Shown here: piece by piece, positions 30,994-48,965 of the stretch
Layout: each line of letters begins with the position of its first letter
How positions within the stretch are numbered: the first letter of the stretch is position 1
Source: Takakia lepidozioides
Lineage: Eukaryota > Plantae > Bryophyta
DNA length: 64,000 nucleotides
Direction: 5' to 3'
Assembly (NCBI GenBank): GCA_030704615.1
Contig: CM060734.1
Location: 47,616,001-47,680,000, forward strand
Program-made: the position numbers and the translations under genes
Notes under the pieces: model-generated
The model's database searches: none
Told to the model about the DNA's origin: nothing
What the model saw: only the letters and a program-made list of their open reading frames with translations

Positions 30994-33900
30994 TCACCAG
31001 TAATCCCCACAGGAACAAATCCCATCTTCAAAGTGGTGAAAGCGGTTAGCGTCCCGTACAACAATTGCTCGGCCAACAATCGTTGAGATGAATTTGGTGG
31101 AGGTGTGGCAGTCACCACACACTCTAAGATTCTTGATGAGACGGAGAGGTGTCCTGGGGGTCGTGCTGATCAGCCCAAAACCAATGGCCAGCTTCTCACT
31201 GTGGTGGCAAAGAGAAAATTCCTTTTCCTCCTCCCCCCCACATCATGCAATACAAAGCGCGTGTCAGGCACATACCCCGCCTTCTTCATCTGCCCAGACA
31301 ATCTTCTCAGCTCAGCATGGATTTCCTTAATTCTGGGATGCAACTTGTCAGCTACAACGAAGGTGTGCACCCTGTTGCCAACCTCAATGCAGCAGCGACC
31401 TGGCTCCTTTCTAACCCCTTTGACCTTCATCATTCTTCTCACCTTTGCAGTATCATCCCACCTGCCAGCTGCAGCATAGATGTTTGAGAGCAACACATAA
31501 GTCGCGGCATCCTGTTCATCCCACATGAGGATAGATGTTGCTGCACGTTCAGCCATCTCCACATTGCCATGGATTCTGCAGGCACCAAGCAAGGCCTTCC
31601 ACACCACAGCATCTGGATTGATGGGCATTTTATTAATCAGGTCCACTGCCTCATCCAGTTGTCCCGCACGTCCAGAAGGTCCACCATGCAGCCAAAGTGC
31701 TTTACTGTCGGAGTGACACCATGATCTTGACTCAGGGAATCAAAGTAGCGTCTTCCTTCATTCAGTAGGCCAGCGTGGCTGCATGCAGAGAGAACACATA
31801 TAAAGGTGATACTGTCCGGCTTCAAGCCGTTCTTTTGCATTCCTTCAAATAGTTGCACGACCTCCCTATGACCACCATGCTGTGCATATCCTGCAATCAT
31901 CGCGTTCCACGACACCACATCTCGTTCAGCCATATTGTCGAACACTCCCTTTGCATGCTCGATGCACCCACATTTGGCATACATGTCCACCAGGTATTGT
32001 TCAGGATCACATCTGGTACGATTCCAGCTCTGATGATGTCGCCATGCACCTCTTTGCCCTTTTCCAGGGCTGCCAGGCTTGCACACGCACTGCAAACGCA
32101 CACAAACGTGATGTGGTCGGGCTTCATCCCTTCGCACATCATTTGCTCATACGTCTCCAAAGCCTCCATCCCGCGCCCCTGCTGTGCATACCCTGCGAGC
32201 ATCGCGTTCCACGACACCACATCTCGTTCAGCCATATTGTCGAACACTCCCTTTGCATCCTCGATGCACCCACATTTGGCATACATGTCCACCAGGGTAT
32301 TGTTCAGGATCACATCTGGTACAATTCCAGCTCTGACGATGTCGCCATGCACCTCTTTGCCCTTTGCCAGGGCTGCCAGGCTTGCACACGCACTGCAAAC
32401 GCACACAAACGTGATGTGGTCGGGCTTCACCCCTTCGCACATCATTTGCTCATACGTCTCCAAAGCCTCCATCCCGCGCCCCTGCTGTGCATATCCTGCG
32501 AGCATCGCACTCCACGACACCACATTTCGTTCAGCCATATTGTCGAACACTCCCTTTGCATGCTCGATGCACCCACATTTGGCATACATGTCCACCAGGG
32601 TATTGTTCAGGATCACATCTGGTACGATTCCAGCTCTGACGATGTCGCCATGCACCTCTTTGCCCTTTTCCAGGGCTGCCAGGCTTGCACACGCACTGCA
32701 AACACACACAAACGTGACATGGTCGGGCTTCACCCCTTTGCACATCATTTGCTCATACGTCTCCAAAGCCTCCATCCCGCGCCCCTGCTGTGCATACCCT
32801 GCGAGCATCGCACTCCAGGACACCACATTTCGTTCAGCCATATTGTCGAACACTCCCTTTGCATGCTCGATGCACCCACATTTGGCATACATGTCCACCA
32901 GGGCAGTTTCAGGATAACATCTGGTACGATTCCAGCTCTAACGATGTCGCCATGCACCTCTTTTGCCCTTTTCCAGGGCTGCCAGGCTTGCACACGCACT
33001 GCAAACGCACACAAACGTGGTGTGGTCGGGCTTCACCCCTTCGCACATCATTTGCTCATACGTCTCCAAAGCCTCCATCCCGCGCCCCTGCTGTGCATAC
33101 CCTGCGAGCATCGCGTTCCACGACACCACATTTCGTTCAGCCATATTGTCAAACACTCCCTTTGCATGCTCGATGCTCCCACATTTGGCATACATGTCCA
33201 CCAGGGCAGTGTTCAGGATCACATCTGGTACGATTCCAGCTCTGACGATGTCGCCATGCACCTCTTTGCCCTTTTCCAGGGCTGCCAGGCTTGCACACGC
33301 ACTGCAAACGCACACAAACGTGATGTGGTCGGGCTTCACCCCTTCGCACATCATTTGCTCATACGTCTCCAAAGCCTCCATCCCGCGCCCTGCTGTGCAT
33401 ACCCTGCGAGCATTGCACTCCAGGACACCACATTTCGTTCAGCCATATTGTCGAACACTCCCTTTGCATGCTCGATGCTCCCACATTTGGCATACATGTC
33501 CACCAAGGCAGTGTTCAGGATCATATCTGGTACGATTCCAGCTCTGACAATGTCGCCATGCACCTCTTTGCCCTTTTCCAGGGCTGCCAGGCTTGCACAC
33601 GCACTGCAAACGCACGCAAACGTGATTTGGTTGGGCTTCACCCCTTCCCCCATCATTTGCTCATAGGTCTCCAAAGCATTCCTACCACACCCATGCTTGG
33701 TAAATCCTGCCAACATTGTATTCCACGTGATCAAAGATCGTTGAGGCATTCTGTTGAACACTTGGTGAGCATCCATGATGCTCCCGCACTTAACATACAT
33801 GTTGACAAGGGTGTTGAGGAGAAAAACATTTGGCGTGAATCCACTTTGGATAATGTGAGTGTGCACCTGCTTTCCAGCTTCCAGGCCTTTCACCTTGATG

Positions 33901-35640
33901 CACTTACGCAAGAGACAGACATACGTTTCTGTATCTGCTGAAATGCCTCCTTGGTTTAAAGTCTGTAGAGCCTCTTTCAGTCTGCCTGCCTCACAAATCA
34001 TCTTCACATGCCCAGAAGTGCCAGAAGAGGCATTGTGGACTCCCTCTCTTGATCCTCTTCCAGAAGCTGTGGTCATGGTTGAGGTGCCTGATTTTATCAA
34101 CTGTGCCGCTGCAGCTGCTGCCTTGAGTTGACCATCTACCCATGGAGGTTTCTTGTAGCTATTGATCCACAGGGAATCATAGGTAATCTTGTGCTTGAAA
34201 TCTGGCCCTCTTGGATGAATCTGTACCCACACTCTATCCCTGCTCCTTCAGCTATCCATGCCTCTGCACAAATCATGCATTCATCCTTGCCTTGCTGCTA
34301 ACAGCTGAAAATGACAGCCTAGATTTGTTCTAGGAAACACCCAACTCAGCTTATCACACTAGTTCCTATGCCTATTGCGTCTGCTAGTCTCTGTAATCCA
34401 ACAGGCATTCACCTTTTTGCCTCGATTGTCCCACCATTGACTGGGGTCAGAAAAGTATTCTTTCCACAGCTTCTCCTCGTCTCTGTTACCTGTTTCTGGA
34501 TACTTTCCTGTTGTCACATTGGCAGTATCATGTCAAAGTCACTCCAAACTATCAAAGGGTCACTCAACCAGCTGAATTGCAGAATTCAACATGAAAATTT
34601 AGGGCCGGTTCTGATAAGAGGGAAAAACAGGGTGAAATGTGTTGAAGAAGGTGCCTTCATTAGCAGTGCCTGATTTTATCAATTGTGCCGTTGCTGCTGC
34701 GGCTTCCAGTTGACCATCTACCCATGCAGGTTTCTTGTAGCTATTGATCCACAGGGAATCATAGGTAATCTTGTGCTTGAAATCAGGCCCTTTTGGATGA
34801 ATCTGGACCCACACTCCATCCCTGCTCCTTCAGCTATCCATGCCTCTGCACAAATCATGCATACATCCTTGCCTTGGTGCTAGCAACAGACAATGACAGC
34901 CTAGAATTCTTCCAGCAAACACCCCAACCATACTTATCACACTAGTTCCTATGCTGACTTGCATCTGCTTCCAACAGGCATTCACCTTTTTGTCTCCTTT
35001 GTCCCACCATTGACTGGCGTCGGAGAAGTGTTCATTCCAAAGCTTCTCCTCGTCTCTGTTATCTGTTTTTGGATACTTTCCTGCTGCCACATTGGCACTA
35101 ACTTGTCAAATTCATTCCAAACCACCACAGATCCACTGCAACATATGGCAAATGAAAGGCTACAACTTGGATATTCAAATATGCAAATTCAGGACCGAGT
35201 CTGATGAGAGCGCAAAACAGGCTGAAATAGGTCGAAGAAGGTGCCCTCACCACATTGTCCTTGACCTTGTGTCATGACCCATGGAAGATTTGACCGACCA
35301 TCAACCCAAAAAGACCTCTTGTGTGTGCTGCTTGTGTCTGTAGTCAGGTAATCTCGGATTGGTCTGTGAGAACCACCACGGTGCAGATGAGCAGGCAGAG
35401 ATTGAAACACGGCCTGATAAGACCAAGCTGACTCTCCCAAGAACCTTGTAAACGTCAGGAAGAATACCAAATCATGGTACTAACAGGTGCCAAGAGCCCA
35501 CATTTGCAGGATGGACAATCATCTTCACATCGTACATTGAGAAAAAGCCACACCTTGCGATTGCGGTTCTCCCACCATCGTGAAGGATCTTTAAAAAACT
35601 CATGCCAGCTCTGCTCCGTGCTCCAAGGTAGAGGTTTGTG
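30994..35640 (-). pseudogene. PDF(x3)-PLS-PPR-E-DYW gene, frameshifted (pseudogene or sequence errors)
   Basis: PDF exon pairs at ~35640-35554/35363-35251, 35080-34986/34802-34664, and 34507-34413/34220 onward, the last running in frame into PLS repeats. E domain (AVVWKALLGACRIHG), PG box PGRCCIEV, HSEKLA, CGDC, ...CSCGDYW* with stop at 30994-30996. Single-base indels near 35310, 33388, 32960, 32905, 31993, 31675, 31235; the donor after 34664 reads CT instead of GT. Confidence 0.85.
31897..33675 (-). repeat. Near-identical 303-bp tandem repeats (P-L-S triplets), about 6 copies
   Basis: 101-codon unit VVSW(S/N)AMLAGYAQQGRGMEALETYEQMMCEGVKPD-HITFVCVCSACASLAALEKGKEVHGDIVRAGIVPD-VILN(N/T)(T/A)LVDMYAKCG(C/S)IEHAKGVFDNMAER(N/D), repeated with very few nucleotide differences. 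Confidence 0.95.
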
Positions 35641-35929
35641 ATCGAAAATTCGACAGCATCAACATGTTGACATTGTCCTTTACTGAGGGGTGCTAGTGAG
35701 CTTTCAACAACATTCATGCAAGTTGTTTTGGGCTCCATTGGGCTCTACACGGTGAGGAACAACGAACTCCAAACTCCGCTCAAGAAACGTGTGCTTTTAC
35801 CGAACTTCCAACAAGGATATCACTGTGCTCTTCCAAGGTGGCAGGGGTCAGGGGCCCTACATCGACCACCGGTTCGTCGTCGTGCCGTTCTGATGGCTCC
35901 TAGCGGTTAGCGCTTGTGAAGCACGGAAT

Positions 35930-36500
35930 GGCTCCTTGTCTCTGTTACCTGTTCAAAGGGTTCACTCAACCAGCTAACTTGCAGAATTCAACATGAAAAT
36001 TTAGGGCCGGTTCTGATAAGAGGGAAAGACGGGGTGAAATGTGTTGAAGAATGTGCCTTCATTACCAGTGCCTGATTTTATCAATTGTGCCGCTGCTGCT
36101 GCGGCTTCCAGTTGACCATCTACCCTTGCAGGTTTCTTGTAGCTATTGATCCACAGGGAATCTTGTGCTTGAAATCTGGCCCTCTTGGATGAATCTGGAC
36201 CCACACTCCATCCCTGCTCCGTCAGCTATCCATGCCTCTGCACAAATCATAATACATCCTTGCCTTGCTGCTAGCAGCTGACAATGCCAGCCTAGGTTTG
36301 TTCTAGGAAACACCCAACTCAGCTTATCACACTAGTTCCTATGCTCATTGCGTCTGCTACTCTCTGTAATCCACCAGGCATCCACCTTTTTGCCTCGATT
36401 GTCCCACCATTGACTGGGGTCAGAAAAAGTATTCTTTCCACAGCTTCTCCTCGTCTCTCTTACCTGTTTCTGGATACTTTCCTGTTGTCACATTGGCAGT
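35930..36500 (-). pseudogene. Extra duplicated, degenerate PDF exon pair
   Basis: Exon A 36481-36386 has an extra T giving a stop. Exon B 36194-36066 has a 10-bp deletion and PAW>PAR. The intron is nearly identical to 34221-34412. Confidence 0.8.
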
Positions 36501-37269
36501 GTTAACAAGTCGCTGCCTATTCTCCCACGTTATATGACTTCCACTCGGAATTGAAAAGACATCGACCCCTTTGAACTGTACTCGTCGGCATTCAAACTTT
36601 CCAGTTCTCCTGCTGCTATATCAGTGATTTCGGTCTTGTTCTCTCAACGCAAAATTTCAGTTCAATATTCGACCTTCCACAGGCATGGGGATGGCAGAAT
36701 GCTCAAGCGCTCTTCTGCACCCGCAGGGACAGACGATCCCCACGAAACTGTCTTCTTGCGGTGGAGACCTTACGTCATGCAGCAGATTACCGGACCATGC
36801 TCTAGAGCTGAAATGCATATCCTCCTTGGCAATCCCGGGCGGGAGACCCTTACAGGTGACTCCGACAGCTTCCCAGTCTCCAGGGAACGTGACGAACGGT
36901 AGAGACATGTAAGTCTTTGAGTTTAATTTTTTGGTCTCTAAACTTGGTGAGTCCATCATGCAGGTTCTACATTGTTCCTTGTCCCACCCCAGCAGAAACT
37001 AAACTAATCCATTCAACTTATGGGCTACAAGACTGTAATTGGCATCCCTCATCACCTGAATGTCTGCATATTTCTGGTCTTTACATGACGTGCATGGGAC
37101 AGACACGGAGGGACAGAGAGCCGTCTATTGGACTTGCTTGCAGCTACTGCCTGTGGGATACCGGTGGATAGGGCAAGTTCCTAGACATGCAAGAAATTGG
37201 GGTCAGTCCTTAATGTGACTTTTAGTTACCATAGATGAGACATATACTGATCTCTCTGGTGCAGGGAGG

Positions 37270-40200
37270 ATGCATGAAGGGCAGAGACAGATGCACCTGC
37301 GGACTGTGAGGGATATTAACCTTGCAGAGCCAGTTGTCAGGTTTTTACCGACCAGGGTATGGAAACTGAGGCCATACCAGTATTCACTAGGAGGAACAGG
37401 GCCGGAGAAAGAGAAGTCGCTACTCATCAATTACAGTAAGACTTGGGCAATTAGATTCTGTCAAAGATCATGTTTTACTGGTGTTTGCATGCAGGACAGC
37501 AGTAAGCATGGAACTGCTTTTGCAAGAGTTCAAATCAGATCCTATGCAGTGGTGGGACAACAGTTCTAATAAGGTGAGGCTACCTCTACTGTAATCAAAA
37601 CATTCTGAGTCTCTAGGATAGAAAGGGCATTGATTTCTTCCTTGGATAAAGCTGGTATGTTTGTAGAGTGAACCCTGGTTGAAGCTGATTTGATTGATGA
37701 TTTGGTCTGTCACACCTCCTGTAGTGGTTGCTGGATAGGTCATTGTTGATGCACAGTAGAATTGAGCTGGTGGTGCAATATGGTAGCCTGTTGTTTGAAG
37801 TGATGGTTGTGGAGCTTTGGTGGTTACAGCCTGATCTCTATGGGGTAAATTGGATTGAATCTATGGCTGCTCAGCTGCTCCCTTGTGCATTTTATAGACA
37901 AGTCGAAGATCACCAGACTTCAGACATAAGCGCACAAAGGAGGTCCTTTGGATTGAGGATTGGTCCACTCCTCCTTGGGTGAAATCAGAGCTAGTTGACA
38001 TAATACAAGGTCGAGTACAATCTGGTGACGGTTCTAATGTTGATATCCATCAGGGAGCTTCAGTCGAAGAATTCAAAGGGTATTTTTTTGATGATGTCAA
38101 GGGTCCCAACTGAAATAGATGGAGTGGGTACAGTGAATCTCGAATATATGACTAAAATATTTTGGTAACCTTGTACATATGTAGCAAGAAACCTGTCCTC
38201 ATGGGGATTTGAAGTATCTAGGAGCTTTGAGATATGTTATGTGAGTGTGAGTGTGAAGGTTTGTCACTAAGAGTTTTGAGTCAATGCAGGATGGCAGGGT
38301 TGAATCAGAGACAATGTTTTGTCGGACTTCAGACCAGTGGCACAGATGTCACATCCACTATCACCCCTTCTTTTGAGAATGGTCTAAGAGAGGGACTTGA
38401 CAAGATCGCTTCTGGCACTTGTGGGGATGTGAGGACACTGTGTAAGGCAGGAAGACTGAAAGATGCACTGCGCATTTTGGACCATAGAGGCATTCAGGCA
38501 GACTCGAATACTTATGTCTGTCTGTTGCAGGAGTGCATGAAGATGAAATGCCTATCAGAGGGAAAACGGGTGCACGACCACATTGTCGAAAGCAGATTCA
38601 AGCCAAACACCTTTCTACTCACCACCCTTGTTAACATGTATGCTAAGTGTCGAAGCTTGGTGGATGCACGACTAGTGTTTGAAAAAATGCCTGAACGAGA
38701 TATATTTACATGGAATTCAATGATAGCCGGATATGCCAAAAATGGATGTGGTAGGGAGGCATTCAAGATTTATGAGCAAATGCAACAGGAAGGGGTGATG
38801 CCGGACAAGATCACATACATTTGCATTCTCAATGCATGTGTCAGCCTCGCAGCCCTGGAAAAGGGCAAAGCAATCCATGCAGACATCATTAAGGCTGGAT
38901 TTGACTCATATATTAAGTTGGAAAATACCCTGATCGACATGTATGCCAAGTGTGGGAGCATGAAGGATGCATGTGAAGTGTTCGACAATATGGCCCAACG
39001 GGATGTGGTCTCTTGGAACGCCATGATTGCAGGATATGCTCAGCATGGCTTAGGTAGGGAGGGTTTTCAGATTTACGAGCAAATGATTCAGGATGGCGTG
39101 AAACCCAATAAGGTAACATTCATTTCTGTTCTCAATGCATGTGCCAGCTTAGGAGTACTGGAAAAGGGCAAGGAGGTCCATGCTGACATCGTCAGAGCTG
39201 GTATTGCATCATACATCAATTTGGAAAATACCCTTGTTGACATGTATGCCAAATGTGGGAGCATGAAGGATGCGCATCAAGTGTTCGACAATATGACTCA
39301 ACGAGATGTGGTCTCATGGAATGCCATGATCACAGGATATGCTCAGCATGGATGTGGTAGGGATGCTTTTGAGTTCTATGAGAAGATGCAACTGGAAGGA
39401 GTGACGCCCGTGAGGGTTACGTTCATTTGCATTCTCAAGGCATGTGCCAGCTTAAGAGCCCTTGCAAAGGGAAAAGAGGTACATACGGCCATCACCAAAG
39501 CTGGAATTGCGCCAGATATCATCCTTGAGACTGCCCTTGTTGACATGTATGCTAAATGTGGGAGTATAGAGGAGGCACATGGAGTGTTCGACAATATGGC
39601 TCAACGAAGTGTGGTCTCATGGAGCGCAATGATCACAGGATATGTCCAGCATGATTGTGGTAGGGAGGCTTTGAAGATGTACGAGCAAATGCAACAAGAA
39701 AGGGTTATGCCTGACAAGGTCACCTTTATTTGTGTTCTCAATGCATGTGCCAGCCTAGGAGCCCTGGATAAAGGCAAAGAGGTTCATGCTGACATCATCA
39801 AAGCTGGAATTGCTTCCTATATTAACCTGGAGAATGCCCTCATTGACATGTATGCCAAATGCGGAAGCATGAACGATGCCCATCGAGTGTTGAACAGTAT
39901 GGCTCAACGAAATGTGGTCTCATGGAATGCCATGCTTGGATATGCTCAGCATCAGTGCGGCGAGGAGGCTTTTGAGATCTATGAGCAAATGCAAAAGGAA
40001 GGAGTGACACCTGACAAGGTCACGTACATTTGCATTCTCAAGGCTTGTGCTAGCTTACTCGCCCTGGAAAAGGGCAAAGAGGTGCACGCCGACATCATCA
40101 AAGCTCAACTTGCACCAGACATCATTCTGGAAACTGCCCTTGTTGACATGTATGCCAAATGCGGGAGCTTTAAGGATGCACTTCAAGTGTTTGACAGTAT

Positions 40201-41440
40201 GGCTAGCCGAAATGTGGTCTCATGGAGTGCAATGATCACAGGGTACGCTCAGCATGGGTGTGGTATGGAGGCCTTGAAGATCTATGAGCAAATGCAACTG
40301 GAAGGGGTCACACCTGACAGGGTCGCATTCATTTGCATTCTCAGTGCCTGTGCTAGTCTAGGAGTCCTAGAAAAAGGCAAGGAGGTCCATACTGATATCA
40401 TCAAGTCTGGAATGGCATCATCTATTAAGTTGGAGAATGCCCTTGTTACCATGTATGCCAAATGTGGGAGTGTCAAGGATGCATGTCAAGTGTTTGACAA
40501 TATGGCTGAAAGAGATGTGGTCTCATGGAGTGCGATGATCGCAGGATATGGTCAGAATGGGTGTAGTAACAAGGCCCTGCAACTGTTTGAACAAATGAGA
40601 CAGGAATGCTTGAAGCCAAGCCTTATTACATTTATATCTCTTCTGTCTGCATGTAGCCATGGGGGCCTAGTGGATGAAGGCCAGCATTACTTTGACACCA
40701 TGAGTCGAGATCATGGCCTCAACCCTGCAGTTGAGCATTTTGGCTGCATGGTGGACCTTCTTGGCCGTGGAGGGCGATTGGATGAGGCAGAGGACTTTAT
40801 CAGCAAGATGCCAAGCGAACCAGCTGCTACGGTGTGGGGCGCCCTACTTGGTGCCTGCAGAATTCATGGCAGTGTCGAGCTAGCAGAACGTGCAGCCAAA
40901 TATCTTCTAAAGTGGAATCCGCAGGATGCTGCAACATACGTGCTGCTATCAAACATCTATGCTGCAGCTGGTAGGTGGGACGAAACAGCAAGAGTGAGAA
41001 AAATGATGGAGGACAGAGGTGTCAGAAAAGAGCCAGGCTGGAGTTGCATTGAGGTCAACAACCAGGTGCATACATTTATTGTAGAAGACAAGATGCATCC
41101 ACAAATTGAGGAAATCCATGCTGAGCTGAAGACGTTGTCTGGGCAGATGAAGGAAGCTGGCTATGTGCCCGACACACGCTTTGTATTGCATGATATGGAG
41201 GAGGGGCAGAAGGAATTTATGCTTTCCCACCACAGCGAGAAGCTAGCCATCGCGTTTGGGCTCATCAGTACGCCCCCTGGGATGCCTATCCGCATCATCA
41301 AGAACCTGAGGGTGTGTGGTGATTGCCACACTGCCACTAAGTTCATTTCAAAGATTGTTGGGCGAGAAGTTGTTGTACGTGATGCCACCCGCTTTCATCA
41401 CTTCCAAGATGGGTTTTGTTCTTGTGGGGATTACTGGTGA
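37270..41440 (+). CDS. PDF-motif + PLS-class PPR (23 motifs) + E1/E2 + DYW cytidine deaminase; predicted organellar C-to-U editing factor
   Basis: Large exon 38290-41440: L-S-(P-L-S)x6-P2-L2-S2, PGWSCIEV, HSEKLA, CGDCH, DYW*. Upstream exons ~37495/37500-37573 (MELLLQEFKSDPMQWWDNSSNK) and 37898-38079 (TSRRSPDFRHKRTKEVLWIEDWSTPPWVKSEL...) splice in frame via GT-AG. Start exon 37270-37435 is tentative. Confidence 0.88.
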
Positions 41441-42797
41441 AATAATCGACATTCACGAAATAGTGCAGCATATCAAACTTGAGAGGGCCAGATTTCTGGA
41501 AGCAAAGATGGGAGTCAAAGTAAACCATTTGTCAGGAAATATATCAGTCCGTACTGAGGCCCCTGGTGATGACCGCAAGCCAATCATGACCATCAGCATC
41601 AGTGTAATCATGGAGAATCTTATTGCAGAGACAGCCTGCAGGAAGAAAATCCAGAAGTTCCACCAAAAAGGTTAAAGAATGGCATTCCCAAATAACTGAG
41701 GAAAAACAGCATAAGGTTGTGGTTCTCTTTGGGGTGATAGGAGAACATCCATCATCTCAATGTGTAGTGATGGATTCTCCTTTACCTTGCCACAAGAGCT
41801 GGAGAGGCTTCAAAGTTAAATTCTCTCAGGTTTACGGCGTTCGAGTTCCACATACATGAGATTGAGCTCACAGTATTGTGAGTAAGCTTGTGAGGTTATG
41901 TTTGAATGTCACAATGATATTAGCCAGTTTGTGGCTAATATGCACATTTGGTGAGTACCGACAACTAATGATCAGGAGTAGACCTCTTCTAAATTGAAGG
42001 CACAGTAGATGAGTTTCTTGTATACTACTGAACCACAATCGGCCTTTACATATTGTTGATCACGCTGGCCACCCAACCTGCAAAGCAACAAGATCAGAAA
42101 CCGTGACAGGAGAATATTCCTACACATTTCAGAAATGCTTGGTTGATATTTGACTAAGGACATAGCAGCTCCACAATAAAAAGCAATATGCAAGCTTTTC
42201 TTTTCAAGCGTCACTTTCTGTTAGCATCTGTTGTGAAGAATCCTAGCTAATTTTGCAACTCAGCTTCTCTGACAATTAAAGTTTTGCTGTGACAATAGAG
42301 GGAGACAATTCATCAACTGTGACCTTGCCGGCTTCCTCACTTCTAAACTCTCGCTCCAAATGTTCTCGTTATGAATAAAAAGGTGGCCAGAGGTGCGGAT
42401 TTTGCAGTCAAGGTTCAAAAGGGCGAAAACAATTCTAATTTTTTTGAAATAATTCAAACATGTAGAGGAATTCAAAAATATGACCGTTGCTGTCATCCTC
42501 GCTGGTTTCCCTCCAATGGCCCTCCTCCGCCCCTCTCCCTCTTTCTTTCTTGCTTCTTTGATTTTATGTCTGTGACTTGTCTGCTCTTCTCTCCGGACGT
42601 GCACACATGCTCTCTACTGCTGCATGGCATGTGTGTGGTCATGGAGTGCTGTGCAATGAACCAAAGTGACTAAGAGTTGAAGAAATCTAGAAAGATTAAG
42701 AGCTTCACGGATTATGGGCGCTGCCCACCATTGCAACTAAGAATCGAAGGAGACCTACAAATTAAGAGGAGCATCGAGATCACAGGTTAGGGAGAAG

Positions 42798-45566
<2,769 letters not shown>

Positions 45567-47417
45567 ACTAACAAAATCCTGTCCCCTCTTGTGTGCTGGA
45601 CCCTTTCCCCTTCTCATGATCAGGGGGATAGTGTTCCCCTCCCCAAAATCTGTTTTCTGGATGCCTCCTGCCTTCAAACGAGCTGTTTGAGAGGCTGATT
45701 CTCACCACAGGTTGAGAGGGTGATTGTTCGAACGCATTACAGTGGCAGCTATGGATGAGTGTATCCAACTTAGCCAATTATGTGAGAACTGTCAGGGATT
45801 CTGCTGAAACATGTGTTTCTCTCTCCTTCATCACATATAGAGATTCCAAACCAAGATTGTAACAACTGAATCAGTGGAGAACTCTGATTCATCCTCAAGC
45901 AAATAGGAGTCTTTCAGTGCTTTGTCTTGTAAATGAAAGCTTCCTTTTGCCAAACACCACTGAAGGTTTTTGTCTCTTTTGATACGACTGATGTCTCCAT
46001 ATGTGTAAATTTTCCTGCTTCTGTGGCTGCTGATGGTTGACAGAGATTGAGTGACCAGGTACTCAAGCAAGTCCATCCGGATTGTCATTGTTTGTGTGTC
46101 AACATCACAACAGGTATGGGGTGAGTCACATATAGCATGGGAGGCTAAAATGCAATGGTGGTGCATTTGGTTCTCTGGAAGGTTGTGAATGTGCTCGTGT
46201 GAGCATTCTGGTATATTACTTATGTTCTCTCAATACCCATAGAATTTGCTATGGTGAAATGAATATTCACACAGACAAAACTATAAAAATCTGTGCTCAC
46301 TTGAGCAGAAACAATCCAATACTAAAAGTGCCTGGCTTTTGGCATGCTTGCGGTGTTACCATCTGCTGATGGCCCTATTATGGTAGTATTTTTTCCAACC
46401 ACTCCTTTAATATGATATACAGGGCCCTTTTTATATCGCACCTTTTTTTCCTAAACCAGTTCAAATATTTCATGTTTCACAACATACTTCATACTTCATA
46501 CTTCAACACTTCATAAAGGAAAAGGATCAGTTTTTCGGTATTGACTTCTTTGCATGACATTCTCATCCATAAGAAAAACATTGGAAAGAGTCCTGCCACC
46601 AAATTTGCTGAAACCCTGTAAAGCTACCAACTGACATGAAGTGACTGTACAAAGGATGGAAAGTTCCCATAGCGAGGGAAGAGTTAAGTTAACATGAATT
46701 TGGTGTACAATTTGTTATAGTTTCTAATGTGGGGTTGCTAGCGTCAGAACATCGTGTCTGGGCCACAGTGCCGACAGCGCTGGCCGAGGTGACTGTGTAC
46801 TGGCAAACGCGTGTTGCGCTGGAGAAGCGAGTGCAGGGATGGATCTGCGGGAACATTCTAAGTTAGTCCGCAGAAGCGTGCTCCCTGATATGCTGGCTTG
46901 ACAAGACTCACAATCCAGCAGGCACACACTCTGCACTCATACTCCCACCTGCATCATGTTTAGGTTTTCCCGATTTGTAGTCACCAGTTAGGCAACTTAC
47001 AAGTGGTGTTCTGGAGGTTTACCTGTTTCGAGTGTGATGGAAATCCAGAGCACAGCAGCGGCATCGGATTTGCAAGGGGGTGTGGGGACACTGACTACAT
47101 CTGATTCACTTTACCAAATTCTTTAGCTGGCTACAGATCCCATCAAGGGTGCTAAGCTGCGGAAAGCAGTACCTAGTAGTTGAGCATGAATGGCTGTAGG
47201 GATGTTATTGCTTGAGACTTGGAAATCCCGAACGAGCACAAACTGGCAACTTTCTGCAGCCCAGGTTGAGGGATAATCCATCAGGACACTTCCATCAAGA
47301 TGATCCTAATATATGTGTCCAATGGTTACTGGAGAGTTTGGATAGGAGATCCAAGGCAGAACCCTGCTGCCAATTGTTAACTGATTGCTCCGAGCAGGAG
47401 GCAACAAGTCAGAAGAG

Positions 47418-48965
47418 ATGAGGGGTTTTGGGTGGTGGAATAATGAGCAGGCTCGCTCACTCCTGATGGTGAACTTGGCAGCTATTATGGAGAGGGCAGA
47501 TGAAGCCTTGTTGCCAGGAGTATATAGGGAGATTGGTTTGGCTTTGCATGCGTCACCAGCTCGTCTAGGGTCACTCACACTGGTGAGATCACTGATGCAA
47601 GCACTATGCGCACCTTTGGCAGCCTATGTTGCCGTCCATCATAACCGAGCAAATGTAATCGCACTTGGGGCAATATTATGGTCCATTGCCACTTTCTTTG
47701 TTGGGATCTCTGCTACTTTCGGACAGGTGGCGATATCAAGAGCATTGAACGGTGTGGGGTTAGCAATGGTGGTTCCTGCCATCCAATCTCTAGTAGCAGA
47801 TTCAACTGAAGAGCACAAGCGGGGGGTAGCTTTTGGCTGGCTACAGCTGACAGGCAATGTGGGGTCAGTTTTAGGGGGTCTTTGTTCCATCATGCTTGCT
47901 GGGACTTCGTGGATGGGTTATCCTGGATGGAGACTGTCATTCCATTTGGTGGCAATTGTGAGCATTGTGGTGGCACTGTTAGTGCATGCATTCGCCATTG
48001 ATCCACGATTTCCTACTGGGCATACACCTCCTATGCGGAAAAGGAAGTCGGTTTTATCAGGAATGTGGCAAGATTTGAAGGAAATGCTTTTGCAAGCGAA
48101 ACAAGTGGTGCAGATCCAAACCTTTCAGATTTTGGTGGCCCAGGGGGTGGCAGGATCCTTTCCATGGGCGGCACTAGCATTTGCACCCATGTGGCTGGAG
48201 CTCATCGGGTTCTCCCATGCAGTAACGGCTATCCTATTGTTCATTTTTACAGTTGCAACGTCGCTGGGGGCCGTCTTTGGTGGGAAAATGGGTGACATCC
48301 TTTCCATTCGACTACCTAATGCAGGGAGGATAATATTATCTCAAATTAGCTCCGGGCTAGGGGTACCATTGGCAGCAGTACTGTTTTTGGTTTTGCATGA
48401 CAATGCTCAAACAGCTGTGGCACATGGATTTGTGTTCTTCATCTTGGGTTTCTTTACATCCTGGAATGCTGCTGCAACGAACAACCCCATCTTTGCAGAG
48501 ATTGTACCTGTGGAGGCACGCACAAATGTGTATGCACTGGATCGCTCCTTTGAGACAGTCCTAGCATCATTTGCCCCACCAATTGTGGGTCTCCTTGCCG
48601 AGAAATGGTATGGTTACATCCCCCCCCAAAGGGATGCGGATCAGGACACAAAGCTTGAAGTTGACAGAGAAAATGCTGTCTCTCTATCCAAGGCTCTGTA
48701 TACTTCAATGGGCATCCCCCTTTTTGTTTGTTGTTTGATCTACACACTGCTTTATTGGACATATCCGCGAGACCGCGACCATGCTCTGTTTGAGTCTCAA
48801 ATCGGTAAGGAGACAGGGACACACCATAGGCTGGAAGTCTTCAATGGAAAGGATGGTGGAATCGCTGTTCTTCAGGAAGAGGATGAAGAGAAGGATGAGG
48901 GCAGCGGATACATGGAGAGTTCAACAGAAACTGAGTGTATGCTTCCCGAGTTACAAGAGATTTGA
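47418..48965 (+). CDS. Major facilitator superfamily transporter (plant UNE2/Spinster-like clade), single exon
   Basis: LLMVNLAAIMERADEALLPGVY, AIQSLVADST, QGVAGSFPW, SWNAAATNNPIFAEIVP, VYALDRSFE, LYWTYPRDR. About 12 hydrophobic segments; first in-frame ATG at 47418. Confidence 0.9.
   Translation: MRGFGWWNNEQARSLLMVNLAAIMERADEALLPGVYREIGLALHASPARLGSLTLVRSLMQALCAPLAAYVAVHHNRANVIALGAILWSIATFFVGISATFGQVAISRALNGVGLAMVVPAIQSLVADSTEEHKRGVAFGWLQLTGNVGSVLGGLCSIMLAGTSWMGYPGWRLSFHLVAIVSIVVALLVHAFAIDPRFPTGHTPPMRKRKSVLSGMWQDLKEMLLQAKQVVQIQTFQILVAQGVAGSFPWAALAFAPMWLELIGFSHAVTAILLFIFTVATSLGAVFGGKMGDILSIRLPNAGRIILSQISSGLGVPLAAVLFLVLHDNAQTAVAHGFVFFILGFFTSWNAAATNNPIFAEIVPVEARTNVYALDRSFETVLASFAPPIVGLLAEKWYGYIPPQRDADQDTKLEVDRENAVSLSKALYTSMGIPLFVCCLIYTLLYWTYPRDRDHALFESQIGKETGTHHRLEVFNGKDGGIAVLQEEDEEKDEGSGYMESSTETECMLPELQEI

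What the first reader, a model, noticed from the sequence alone, without database searches (positions are those of the whole stretch)
37270..41440. OSB-type 'PDF' ssDNA-binding motif spliced onto an intact PPR-DYW cytidine deaminase
Seen: two small exons upstream of the PPR ORF (~37500-37573 and 37898-38079) join through GT-AG introns to give ELLLQEFKSDPMQWWDNSSNK|TSRRSPDFRHKRTKEVLWIEDWSTPPWVKSEL. A phase-2 intron (38080-38289) continues the frame into 23 PLS repeats, E1/E2 and a DYW domain with intact HSE and CGDC zinc ligands. Established: WWDNRxxK.NP..PDFKHK.T.EALW...P.WV is the PDF motif of plant organellar ssDNA-binding proteins (OSB1, OSB2/PTAC9), where it mediates ssDNA binding; PLS-DYW proteins are site-specific organellar C-to-U RNA editors and usually carry only a transit peptide before the repeats. 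Inference: a PDF-PPR-DYW chimera, with no SSB/OB domain visible, could tether an editor to nucleoids or transcription bubbles for co-transcriptional editing, or could deaminate ssDNA/R-loops. I know of no functional description of this architecture but cannot run a search.
Basis: partly seen in the sequence, partly recalled or inferred. Interest (0 to 1): 0.93.

Follow-up and report, generated by a model that had tools for sequence, protein, structure and literature searches.

The report
PPR-DYW RNA editor carrying OSB PDF motif
This plant gene for an organellar RNA-editing enzyme (PPR-DYW type) carries at its front the small "PDF" module known from organellar single-stranded-DNA-binding OSB proteins. 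It is one member of a large gene family of liverworts, mosses, lycophytes and ferns for which I found no published description.

Summary
Exon 37495-37573 and exon 37898-38079 encode the two halves of one PDF motif. A GT-AG intron (38080-38289, phase 2) continues the frame into an intact 1049-residue PLS-E-DYW reading frame ending at 41440.

A profile built only from PDF motifs of proteins without detectable PPRs matches the two exons back to back (E 4e-4 and 6.5e-13). No OB/SSB domain lies nearby.

The architecture is real beyond this locus:
- In the neighbouring paralogue, a Diphasiastrum gene and a Calypogeia gene, the second PDF half and the PPR(-DYW) body share one uninterrupted exon.
- The intron inside the PDF motif sits at the same place in all of them and in an asparagus OSB2-like gene.
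- About 100 PDF+PPR proteins turned up, from Diphasiastrum (about 90 locus tags), Sphagnum, Ceratodon, Adiantum, Calypogeia and Riccia. All are unnamed.

For this locus, splicing of the extra intron is inferred, not read. Contig depth falls to about zero in all proposed introns. One exact contig ends at a GTAAGT donor (36908), which suggests an upstream exon.

No held paper links PDF motifs to PPR or DYW. The function of the PDF part is untested.

The scan had already noted this combination many times elsewhere in this genome (308 notes, three followed up).

The parts
36471..36908 (+). Inferred upstream exon (5' UTR plus a candidate start codon at 36685; 74 codons + 2 nt up to the donor). The left end is approximate.
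   Evidence: contig record 1 of run X1 (550 nt, 0 mismatches) lies on 36500-36908. It runs 29 nt past the left edge of the laid stretch. It stops exactly before GTAAGT at 36909 while carrying 112 further letters that do not lie on 36909-37484 (depth 0 there). The ORF from 36685 is open to the donor. Its phase (2 nt) fits the acceptor at 37494/37495 (1 nt), by my reading. No homologue and no Pfam family.
36909..37494 (+). Inferred intron 0 (GTAAGT...TGCAG)
   Evidence: Depth 0 in bins 37091-37484 in both runs. Canonical ends.
37495..37573 (+). Exon encoding the first half of the PDF motif (...QEFKSDPMQWWDNSSNK). An in-frame ATG at 37508 is an alternative start.
   Evidence: PDF profile from proteins without PPRs, positions 3-24, E 4e-4. 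PPR-linked profile, positions 2-23, E 3.5e-7. Exon-like depth.
37574..37897 (+). Intron inside the PDF motif (GTGAGG...TTTTATAG, phase 0). Its position is conserved in Diphasiastrum, Calypogeia, the neighbouring paralogue and an Asparagus OSB2-like gene.
   Evidence: T content 0.35 against 0.24 in the exons. Depth 2.7 against 46 and 524 in the flanking bins.
37898..38079 (+). Exon encoding the second half of the PDF motif (SPDFRHKRTKEVLWIEDWSTPPWV) and the start of the linker
   Evidence: PDF profile from proteins without PPRs, positions 25-56, 45.3 bits, E 6.5e-13.
38080..38289 (+). Locus-specific intron between the PDF exon and the PPR exon (GTATTT...TGCAG, 210 nt, phase 2). Splicing is inferred.
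   Evidence: Five in-frame stops if read through. GC 0.376 and T 0.33. Depth about 0. No terminal repeats and no copies elsewhere in the window. Absent at this position in relatives.
38290..41440 (+). Main exon: linker, 24 PPR motifs (about 38426-40864, including 303-bp P-L-S units x6.4 at 76% identity), E1/E2 (about 40865-41140), DYW deaminase domain (41159-41437) and stop
41231..41329 (+). Catalytic zinc-ligand boxes of the DYW deaminase: HSEK 41231-41242, CGDCH 41315-41329
30994..36433 (-). Head-to-head paralogue with four PDF motifs and a decayed PPR-DYW body. It is context, and it shows that PDF and PPR can share one exon.
   Evidence: ORF 33351-34232 (-) holds the PDF second half and the first PPRs without interruption.

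Best explanation
The locus is an intact, probably transcribed member of a large family of nuclear genes of non-seed land plants. In this family an organellar PLS-class PPR-DYW C-to-U RNA-editing factor carries one to four N-terminal PDF motifs of the OSB type.

Proposed gene model: four exons (about 36471-36908, 37495-37573, 37898-38079, 38290-41440). The coding length is 3636 nt, or 1211 codons plus stop, if translation starts at 36685. It gives 1132 residues if translation starts at 37508.

How it works:
- Shown by sequence: 24 PPR motifs whose specificity positions differ from repeat to repeat; E1/E2; and a DYW cytidine deaminase with PG box, HSE and CxDC ligands.
- From established knowledge of PPR-DYW factors: the array binds one RNA stretch 5' of a target C, and the DYW domain deaminates it.
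- Inferred: the PDF motif is a separately folding 55-residue helix-strand-strand-helix module on a flexible linker (about 45 residues in the modelled Ceratodon relative, about 85 here). It adds sequence-unspecific binding to single-stranded nucleic acid, as it does in OSB1. This either holds the editor at nucleoids or nascent transcripts, or adds affinity upstream of the PPR footprint.

Origin: exon shuffling from an OSB-like gene. The intron that splits each PDF motif is at the same place in OSB and PDF-PPR genes.
For: PPR, E and DYW domains are intact.

The PDF halves match a PDF profile from proteins without PPRs back to back at profile position 24/25. A profile from PPR-linked motifs finds Amborella OSB3, Asparagus OSB2-like and SSB-domain proteins.

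Physical linkage does not depend on gene prediction. The PDF second half and the PPRs sit in one ORF in the neighbour. They sit in one exon in Diphasiastrum L002 (protein residues 102-957) and Calypogeia L003 (residues 107-1267). Logan contig L001 holds three complete PDF motifs plus PPRs in one 4116-nt ORF.

Pfam confirms PDF..PPR..E..DYW in Calypogeia, Diphasiastrum and Sphagnum proteins. 100 of 103 proteins hit in the PDF-region search carry the motif by pattern, and 37 end in DYW. The ESM Atlas shape search finds the PDF fold in three PPR/DYW clusters and one SSB cluster (TM 0.80-0.87).

The intron position is shared with Asparagus OSB2-like.

Locus-level evidence: canonical splice sites, T-rich low-GC introns and the frame kept across three introns. 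Depth is about 46/2.7/524/2/679 over exon/intron/exon/intron/exon. Exact-match contigs of similar depth (10-14) lie on the upstream exon, the PPR body and the 3' flank.

AF2: the PDF module alone has pLDDT 91.6. In the model of PDF plus the first PPRs, residues 67-76 and 85-103 of the linker are below pLDDT 50.

The PDF motif of OSB1 is reported sufficient for ssDNA binding (review PMC6963530).
Against: - No displayed read or contig spans 37573/37898 or 38079/38290. The runs are only guessed to be RNA, and most laid contigs are 90-95% paralogues.
- Relatives have no intron between PDF and PPR, so 38080-38289 could be a disruption. An ATG follows the acceptor directly (38291), and exon 2 reaches a stop 11 codons past the donor.
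- The first PDF half departs from three nearly invariant positions (W to L, F to K, R to S) and scores only 16.9 bits.
- The upstream exon has no homologue, and a targeting peptide is not shown.
- Nothing here tests nucleic-acid binding by a PPR-linked PDF motif.
Confidence: 0.7

Rival explanations
1. Split locus. The 210-nt stretch 38080-38289 is not removed. The PDF exons then belong to a short separate product ending at the stop at 38111-38113, or are a dead relic, and the PPR-DYW protein is made alone from the ATG at 38291.
For: Stop 11 codons after the proposed donor, and an ATG 1 nt after the proposed acceptor. Relatives lack an intron here. No junction record was displayed. The first PDF half is weakened.
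Against: Canonical GT...TGCAG ends with intron-like composition. Depth is near zero across 38080-38272 but present on both sides. The frame is preserved. The second PDF half is fully conserved (E 6.5e-13). Without the upstream exons the protein would have only about 45 residues before its first PPR.
Confidence: 0.2
2. Silent or dying copy. The locus is one of hundreds of paralogues and is not expressed, or is on its way to decay like its neighbour. The exon-like depth comes only from expressed paralogues.
For: Most laid contigs are 90-95% alike. The neighbour 30994-36433 is broken in several frames. Earlier notes of the scan report broken copies elsewhere in this genome.
Against: A 3.1-kb frame with no stop or frameshift and all catalytic residues. 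Contigs with 0-2 mismatches on locus-specific parts (36500-36908, 39615-39743, 41573-42175) at similar depth.
Confidence: 0.1
3. Mechanistic rival (the gene model may still hold). The PDF module in PPR proteins does not bind nucleic acid. It serves protein-protein contact or oligomerisation, for instance recruiting the editor to OSB-coated DNA or to partner proteins, in lineages said to lack MORF helpers.
For: OSB2 is reported to be a tetramer (review PMC6963530). The module has no solved structural analogue that would point to a nucleic-acid-binding fold.
Against: The only reported activity of the motif is ssDNA binding in OSB1. The nearly invariant residues are aromatic and basic (W, F, K, R, H), as expected for base stacking and backbone contacts. 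That last point is inference.
Confidence: 0.2
4. The PDF module redirects the DYW deaminase to single-stranded DNA or R-loops, making it a DNA mutator or DNA editor.
For: Only the reported ssDNA affinity of the PDF motif and its fusion to a cytidine deaminase.
Against: The PPR array, E motifs and DYW domain are of the ordinary RNA-editing kind. The module sits at the far end of the protein from the deaminase, on a flexible linker. No evidence of DNA deamination exists for any DYW protein, as far as I know.
Confidence: 0.03

Closest known systems
PLS-class PPR-DYW organellar RNA-editing factors (e.g. Physcomitrium PPR56/PPR65, Arabidopsis DYW-type factors)
   Same: P-L-S repeat array, E1/E2 motifs, and a DYW cytidine deaminase with PG box, HSE, CxDC and terminal DYW. 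Nuclear gene with the body in one exon.
   Different: It carries an N-terminal PDF motif encoded by two extra small exons. Domain lists for Physcomitrium PPR proteins (PMC9459714) and a 2026 kingdom-wide survey of editing-factor domain fusions (PMC13386178) do not mention such a module.
[quoted passage not shown]
   Same: The same roughly 55-residue PDF motif by profile, by predicted fold and by the intron that splits it.
   Different: No OB-fold/SSB domain. The motif is N-terminal instead of C-terminal and is followed by an RNA-binding array and a deaminase.
PDF-PPR(-DYW) proteins deposited as 'hypothetical' or 'uncharacterized' (Diphasiastrum complanatum O6H91_ loci, Sphagnum spp., Ceratodon purpureus M758_3G008300, Calypogeia fissa, Adiantum capillus-veneris)
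   Same: The same architecture, the same linker-to-first-PPR pattern (..LCK/Q.GRLK.AL..) and the same intron inside the PDF motif.
   Different: This locus has one PDF motif with a weakened first half, a longer linker and an extra intron between PDF and PPR. Identity to these proteins is only about 45-55% in the N-terminal part.

Membership tests
PLS-class PPR-DYW RNA-editing factor | Tandem P-L-S pentatricopeptide repeats | tested here: met
   Pfam PF13041 2.8e-132 and PF01535 5.4e-118. 24 motifs in register with a 101-residue period. 303-bp DNA period x6.4.
PLS-class PPR-DYW RNA-editing factor | E1/E2 (E, E+) motifs between the array and the deaminase | tested here: met
   PF20431 5.7e-20 at residues 859-921. 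PF20430 1.3e-4 at residues 926-950.
PLS-class PPR-DYW RNA-editing factor | DYW deaminase domain with PG box, HxE, CxDC(H) and terminal DYW | tested here: met
   PF14432 4.4e-45, full length 1-93/93. KEPGWS, HSEK, CGDCH and CSCGDYW were read.
PLS-class PPR-DYW RNA-editing factor | Import into mitochondria or plastids | tested here: inconclusive
   A candidate 75-residue N-terminal extension lies in the inferred upstream exon. It has no homologue and no family. No targeting predictor is available here.
PLS-class PPR-DYW RNA-editing factor | Site-specific C-to-U editing of an organellar transcript | not testable with these tools
   Needs the organelle transcriptome of the species, or a heterologous assay.
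OSB (organellar ssDNA-binding) family | PDF motif | tested here: met
   A profile of 249 PDF domains from 135 proteins without detectable PPRs (many of them fragments) hits exon 2 at E 6.5e-13 (positions 25-56) and exon 1 at E 4e-4 (positions 3-24). The reciprocal profile finds named OSB2/OSB3.
OSB (organellar ssDNA-binding) family | N-terminal OB-fold (SSB-like) domain | tested here: not met
   No PF00436 hit in the PPR frame, the PDF exons or any ORF of 36624-37569. The profile's OSB-type hits do carry it. The gene is therefore not an OSB.
OSB (organellar ssDNA-binding) family | Binding to single-stranded DNA | not testable with these tools
   Reported for the PDF motif of OSB1 only (PMC6963530).
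PDF-PPR(-DYW) subfamily (undescribed; defined here) | PDF motif(s) N-terminal of a PLS array in the same polypeptide, with the last PDF half and the PPRs in one exon | tested here: inconclusive
   Met for the neighbour, Diphasiastrum and Calypogeia. At this locus an extra 210-nt intron intervenes, and its removal is inferred, not read.
PDF-PPR(-DYW) subfamily (undescribed; defined here) | Intron splitting the PDF motif after WWDxxxxK | tested here: met
   37573/37898 in the window. The same place in L002, L003 and Asparagus OSB2-like L004.

The most novel reading that the evidence does not exclude
The PDF module ties a whole class of PPR-DYW editors of bryophytes, lycophytes and ferns to single-stranded DNA of organellar nucleoids (transcription bubbles, R-loops, replication intermediates). 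Editing in these lineages would then be physically coupled to transcription or DNA maintenance. This could replace the helper proteins (MORF/RIP) that seed plants use. It would also give a natural, portable nucleoid-anchoring tag for engineered editors.
Probability: 0.15. Interest if true: 0.85.

Novelty: new variant of a known kind. Interest (0 to 1): 0.62.

Why it matters
PPR-DYW proteins are the best-understood site-specific RNA editors of plants and the basis of programmable editing tools. Surveys of their domain make-up rely on Pfam, which has no model for the PDF motif. That may be why an N-terminal module present in about 90 Diphasiastrum locus tags, and in mosses, liverworts and ferns, has gone unremarked.

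If the module binds single-stranded nucleic acid as it does in OSB1, it points to a link between editing and nucleoids or nascent transcripts in early-diverging land plants. It also offers a small, independently folding accessory domain to test in synthetic editors.

The shared intron position documents exon shuffling between a DNA-maintenance gene family and an RNA-editing gene family.

Tried and rejected
- Exact look-up of the 1068-aa ORF, and of P0014, P0166 and P0285, in the contig collection: nothing on record.
- Homologue search with the ORF of the upstream exon, hoping for a transcript-derived product that reads across the 36908 junction: no candidate.
- Read laying joint 37567 to 38284: one contig, only 22 letters on its shorter side, letters between unknown. 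It is too weak to count as a splice or as exon skipping.
The donor/acceptor pairs I read by eye give a stop, so I dropped it as a coding exon.
- Transposon-insertion reading of 38080-38289: no terminal inverted repeats, no target duplication beyond a 12-nt chance pair, and no other copy in the window.
- Solved structures: no sequence match, no Foldseek match (best E 4.3), and VIA-align wide best Z 2.6. No known fold can be named for the PDF module.
- Tree of 85 PDF motifs. 19 of 20 PPR-linked motifs fall in one clade (support 94/95), together with 13 motifs from proteins without detectable PPRs, mostly short fragments. The label 'OSB' for those rows is unreliable. The one-clade test did not finish. 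A single origin is neither shown nor excluded.
- Zaegel et al. 2006 (PMC1785405) is not held, so the ssDNA-binding claim rests on the review.
- Complex prediction was not used: I claim no protein-protein contact.
- The spliced coding sequence was never joined, searched or folded. Each exon was handled by reference, and structure models used relatives' stored proteins. Frame continuity was checked by arithmetic on exon lengths only.
Full report
**What is in the sequence**

Translation of 37493-37573 ends in ...SDPMQWWDNSSNK and is followed by GTGAGG. Translation of 37898-38079 begins TSRRSPDFRHK and continues through ...LWIEDWSTPPWV.... The acceptor AG of that exon is itself part of an in-frame TAG, so this half of the motif can only be reached by splicing.

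The stretch 38080-38289 starts GTATTT and ends TGCAG. It is 210 nt long. It leaves GG + G as the junction codon, directly followed by ATG GCA GGG. Read through, it holds five stops, the first at 38111-38113.

The downstream frame (1049 residues from 38291) carries:
- Pfam PPR families at E 1e-118 to 1e-132;
- an E motif (5.7e-20), an E+ motif and a full-length DYW_deaminase domain (4.4e-45);
- the HSEK and CGDCH boxes and a terminal CSCGDYW.

Laid out in 101-residue rows, the array shows 24 PPR motifs. The residues at the specificity positions differ from repeat to repeat. The DNA repeat is 303 bp x 6.4 at 76% identity. That is what a target-specific factor should look like.

**Is the motif really the OSB PDF motif?**

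Pfam has no model for it: exons 1 and 2 give no hit. I tested it in both directions.

First direction. A profile of eight PDF motifs taken from PPR proteins was run against 1.84 billion cluster representatives. It found 1037 proteins at E <= 0.001. Among the best are proteins that NCBI names 'protein OSB3' (Amborella, 6e-58) and 'OSB2-like' (Asparagus), and proteins with the SSB/OB domain PF00436.

Second direction. I built a profile from 249 PDF domains of 135 of those proteins in which no PPR was detected; many of these are fragments. I ran it over all 2680 stop-to-stop segments of the window. Exon 2 scores 45.3 bits (E 6.5e-13) on profile positions 25-56. Exon 1 scores 16.9 bits (E 4e-4) on positions 3-24. 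So the two exons are the two halves of one motif, abutting at the intron.

The first half is weaker than in relatives. Three positions that are nearly invariant in the alignments are changed (W to L, F to K, R to S).

No SSB/OB domain is found in the gene or in any ORF of the 1.2 kb upstream. The gene is therefore not an OSB.

**Is the fusion real?**

Four lines of evidence do not depend on predicting a splice.

1. On the minus strand of the same window lies a head-to-head paralogue (30994-36433) with four PDF motifs. In its ORF 33351-34232, the second half of the last PDF motif and the first PPR motifs are read without interruption.
2. I mapped two deposited proteins on their genomic loci. 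In Diphasiastrum complanatum (L002), residues 76-102 (...WWDTRFDK) form one exon, an 80-nt intron follows, and residues 102-957 (TNARYPDFKHK... through the PPR array) form a single exon; Pfam places a DYW domain at the C-terminus of its 957-residue cluster mate. In the liverwort Calypogeia fissa (L003), residues 107-1267 (KTNVKFPDFKHK... to the DYW end) are one exon.
3. A 4755-nt Logan contig (L001) encodes a presequence-like start, three complete PDF motifs and a PPR array in one 4116-nt ORF. Since every genomic copy examined has the motif split by an intron, this contig is most simply transcript-derived. That is an inference.
4. A shape search of the ESM Atlas with the modelled PDF module finds it, at TM 0.80-0.87 and rmsd 1.0-2.1 over 58-59 residues, in three clusters of PPR/DYW proteins (127, 57 and 63 members) and in one cluster of SSB-domain proteins.

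Pfam confirms the complete PDF..PPR..E..DYW order in proteins of Calypogeia, Diphasiastrum and Sphagnum.

**How widespread is it?**

I ran a word-seeded search with the PDF region of a Diphasiastrum protein, limited to proteins of 461-1468 residues. It returned 103 proteins:
- 100 of them carry the motif by pattern (1 motif: 79; 2 motifs: 15; 3 motifs: 6), and 37 end in DYW.
- About 90 different Diphasiastrum locus tags appear.
- The rest come from Sphagnum magellanicum, S. jensenii, S. fallax and S. troendelagicum, Ceratodon purpureus (1074 aa, ends CSCGDYW), Adiantum capillus-veneris and peat metagenomes.

The representative search adds Sphagnum compactum, another Adiantum model and Riccia sorocarpa. 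None of the identified PDF+PPR proteins came from a seed plant. The searches were not exhaustive, so this is not proof of absence. All are deposited as hypothetical or uncharacterised proteins.

**Origin**

In an Asparagus OSB2-like gene (L004), each of the three PDF motifs is split by an intron between the WWDxRxxK half and the PDFKHK half. This is the same place as in the window gene, its neighbour, Diphasiastrum and Calypogeia. This argues for transfer of PDF exons between an OSB-like gene and a PPR gene.

A tree of 85 motifs puts 19 of 20 PPR-linked motifs in one clade (support 94/95). That clade also holds motifs from short fragments of unknown architecture, and the formal test did not finish. 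A single origin is compatible with the data but not shown.

**The gene model at this locus**

Relatives have no intron between the PDF half and the PPRs, so 38080-38289 is particular to this copy.

In favour of its removal:
- canonical ends;
- GC 0.376 and T 0.33, against 0.45-0.47 and 0.24 in the flanking exons;
- no transposon features;
- the kept frame;
- the depth profile of two public runs of the same organism (contigs only, kind guessed as RNA).

The depth profile reads about 46, 2.7, 524, 2 and 679 over exon 1, intron 1, exon 2, intron 2 and the start of exon 3. It is zero over 37091-37484. Most laid contigs are paralogues at 90-95% identity. Contigs with 0-2 mismatches lie on 36500-36908, 39615-39743 and 41573-42175, at similar depth (10-14). 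This fits one transcript of this locus.

The first of these contigs ends exactly at 36908, before GTAAGT. It carries 112 more letters that are not on 36909-37484. That number equals exon 1 (79 nt) plus the first 33 nt of exon 2, up to the conserved PDFRHK codons where a de Bruijn contig would be expected to break. This is suggestive only.

The ORF from ATG 36685 is open to that donor, and its phase fits the acceptor at 37494/37495. The exon lengths add up to 224 + 79 + 182 + 3151 = 3636 nt, which is 1211 codons plus stop. Each exon was handled by reference and the frame was checked by arithmetic.

No displayed record spans 37573/37898 or 38079/38290. The only joint listed near there (37567 to 38284) rests on 22 letters. 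I put the chance that this locus makes a PDF-PPR-DYW protein at about 0.7.

**How it most likely works**

The PPR-E-DYW part is an ordinary organellar C-to-U editing factor. Its function is inferred from family membership and intact catalytic residues.

AlphaFold2 with an 85-sequence alignment models the PDF motif as a compact helix / two short strands / helix module (pLDDT 91.6). The modelled sequence was a stored segment of the Ceratodon relative. In a model that also includes the first PPRs, the module is joined to them by a linker in which residues 67-76 and 85-103 have pLDDT under 50. It is therefore an independent bead on a flexible tether.

The module has no recognisable solved analogue.

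The only reported activity of the motif is ssDNA binding in OSB1 (review PMC6963530; the primary paper is not held). I therefore propose an unspecific single-strand anchor that raises the local concentration of the editor at nucleoids or nascent RNA, or adds affinity 5' of the PPR footprint.

A protein-contact role is a fair rival. DNA deamination is very unlikely.

**Novelty**

No paper in the held library contains 'PDF motif' together with DYW. 'PDF motif' co-occurs with pentatricopeptide or PPR in a plant context only in a DNA-replication review (PMC6963530). No paper combines the OSB full name with DYW.

The Physcomitrium PPR overview lists RRM, LAGLIDADG, SMR, NYN, CBS and SAP as extra domains, but not PDF. 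A 2026 kingdom-wide survey of editing-factor domain fusions does not contain the words PDF or OSB. Subscription papers are not covered, so 'undescribed' is provisional.

The proteins themselves are already public as unnamed models. Earlier notes of this scan record the same combination at many other places of this genome (308 notes, three followed up with the same conclusion). I re-tested their claim of a distribution over liverworts, mosses, lycophytes and ferns, and it holds.

My verdict is a new variant of a known kind, of real interest to the editing field. This locus is an ordinary, slightly atypical member.

Noticed in passing
window 30994-36433 (-): Head-to-head paralogue with four PDF motifs, two of them degenerate or frameshifted. 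Its PPR body is made of 303-bp units x5.9 at 96% identity and is broken into at least five reading frames, ending in an intact-looking DYW box. It is probably a decaying copy with recent internal duplication or conversion.
   Followed up: partly
window 36471-36908 (+): A transcribed, spliced exon lies antisense to the 5' end region of the minus-strand paralogue. The two divergent genes overlap head to head or share a very short promoter region.
   Followed up: partly
ESM Atlas clusters, rows 5 and 7: Two clusters of hypothetical proteins of tailed phages (Uroviricota; 199 and 187 aa, 54 and 122 members) match the modelled PDF fold at TM 0.74 and 0.65 over 57-60 residues. This is a possible hint at a phage origin of the 'plant-specific' PDF motif.
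   Followed up: no
P0124 (Coptis chinensis KAF9616283.1): This 1526-aa model has three PDF motifs in front of a kinesin motor domain. It is either a further PDF fusion or a merged annotation.
   Followed up: no
P0218 (Riccia sorocarpa KAL3675360.1): PDF motif followed by PPRs with no E or DYW domain detected, in a 458-aa model from a marchantiid liverwort, a lineage reported (from memory) to lack organellar RNA editing. The PDF-PPR combination may not be tied to editing.
   Followed up: no
L001 (Logan SRR4210093 contig, 4755 nt): A single ORF of 1371 aa: presequence-like start, three PDF motifs, a long PPR array, but no E or DYW domain. PDF also occurs on PPR proteins without a deaminase.
   Followed up: partly
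window 47385-48965 (+): Uninterrupted 526-aa ORF of the Major Facilitator Superfamily (PF07690, 2e-42), 6 kb downstream of the PPR gene.
   Followed up: no
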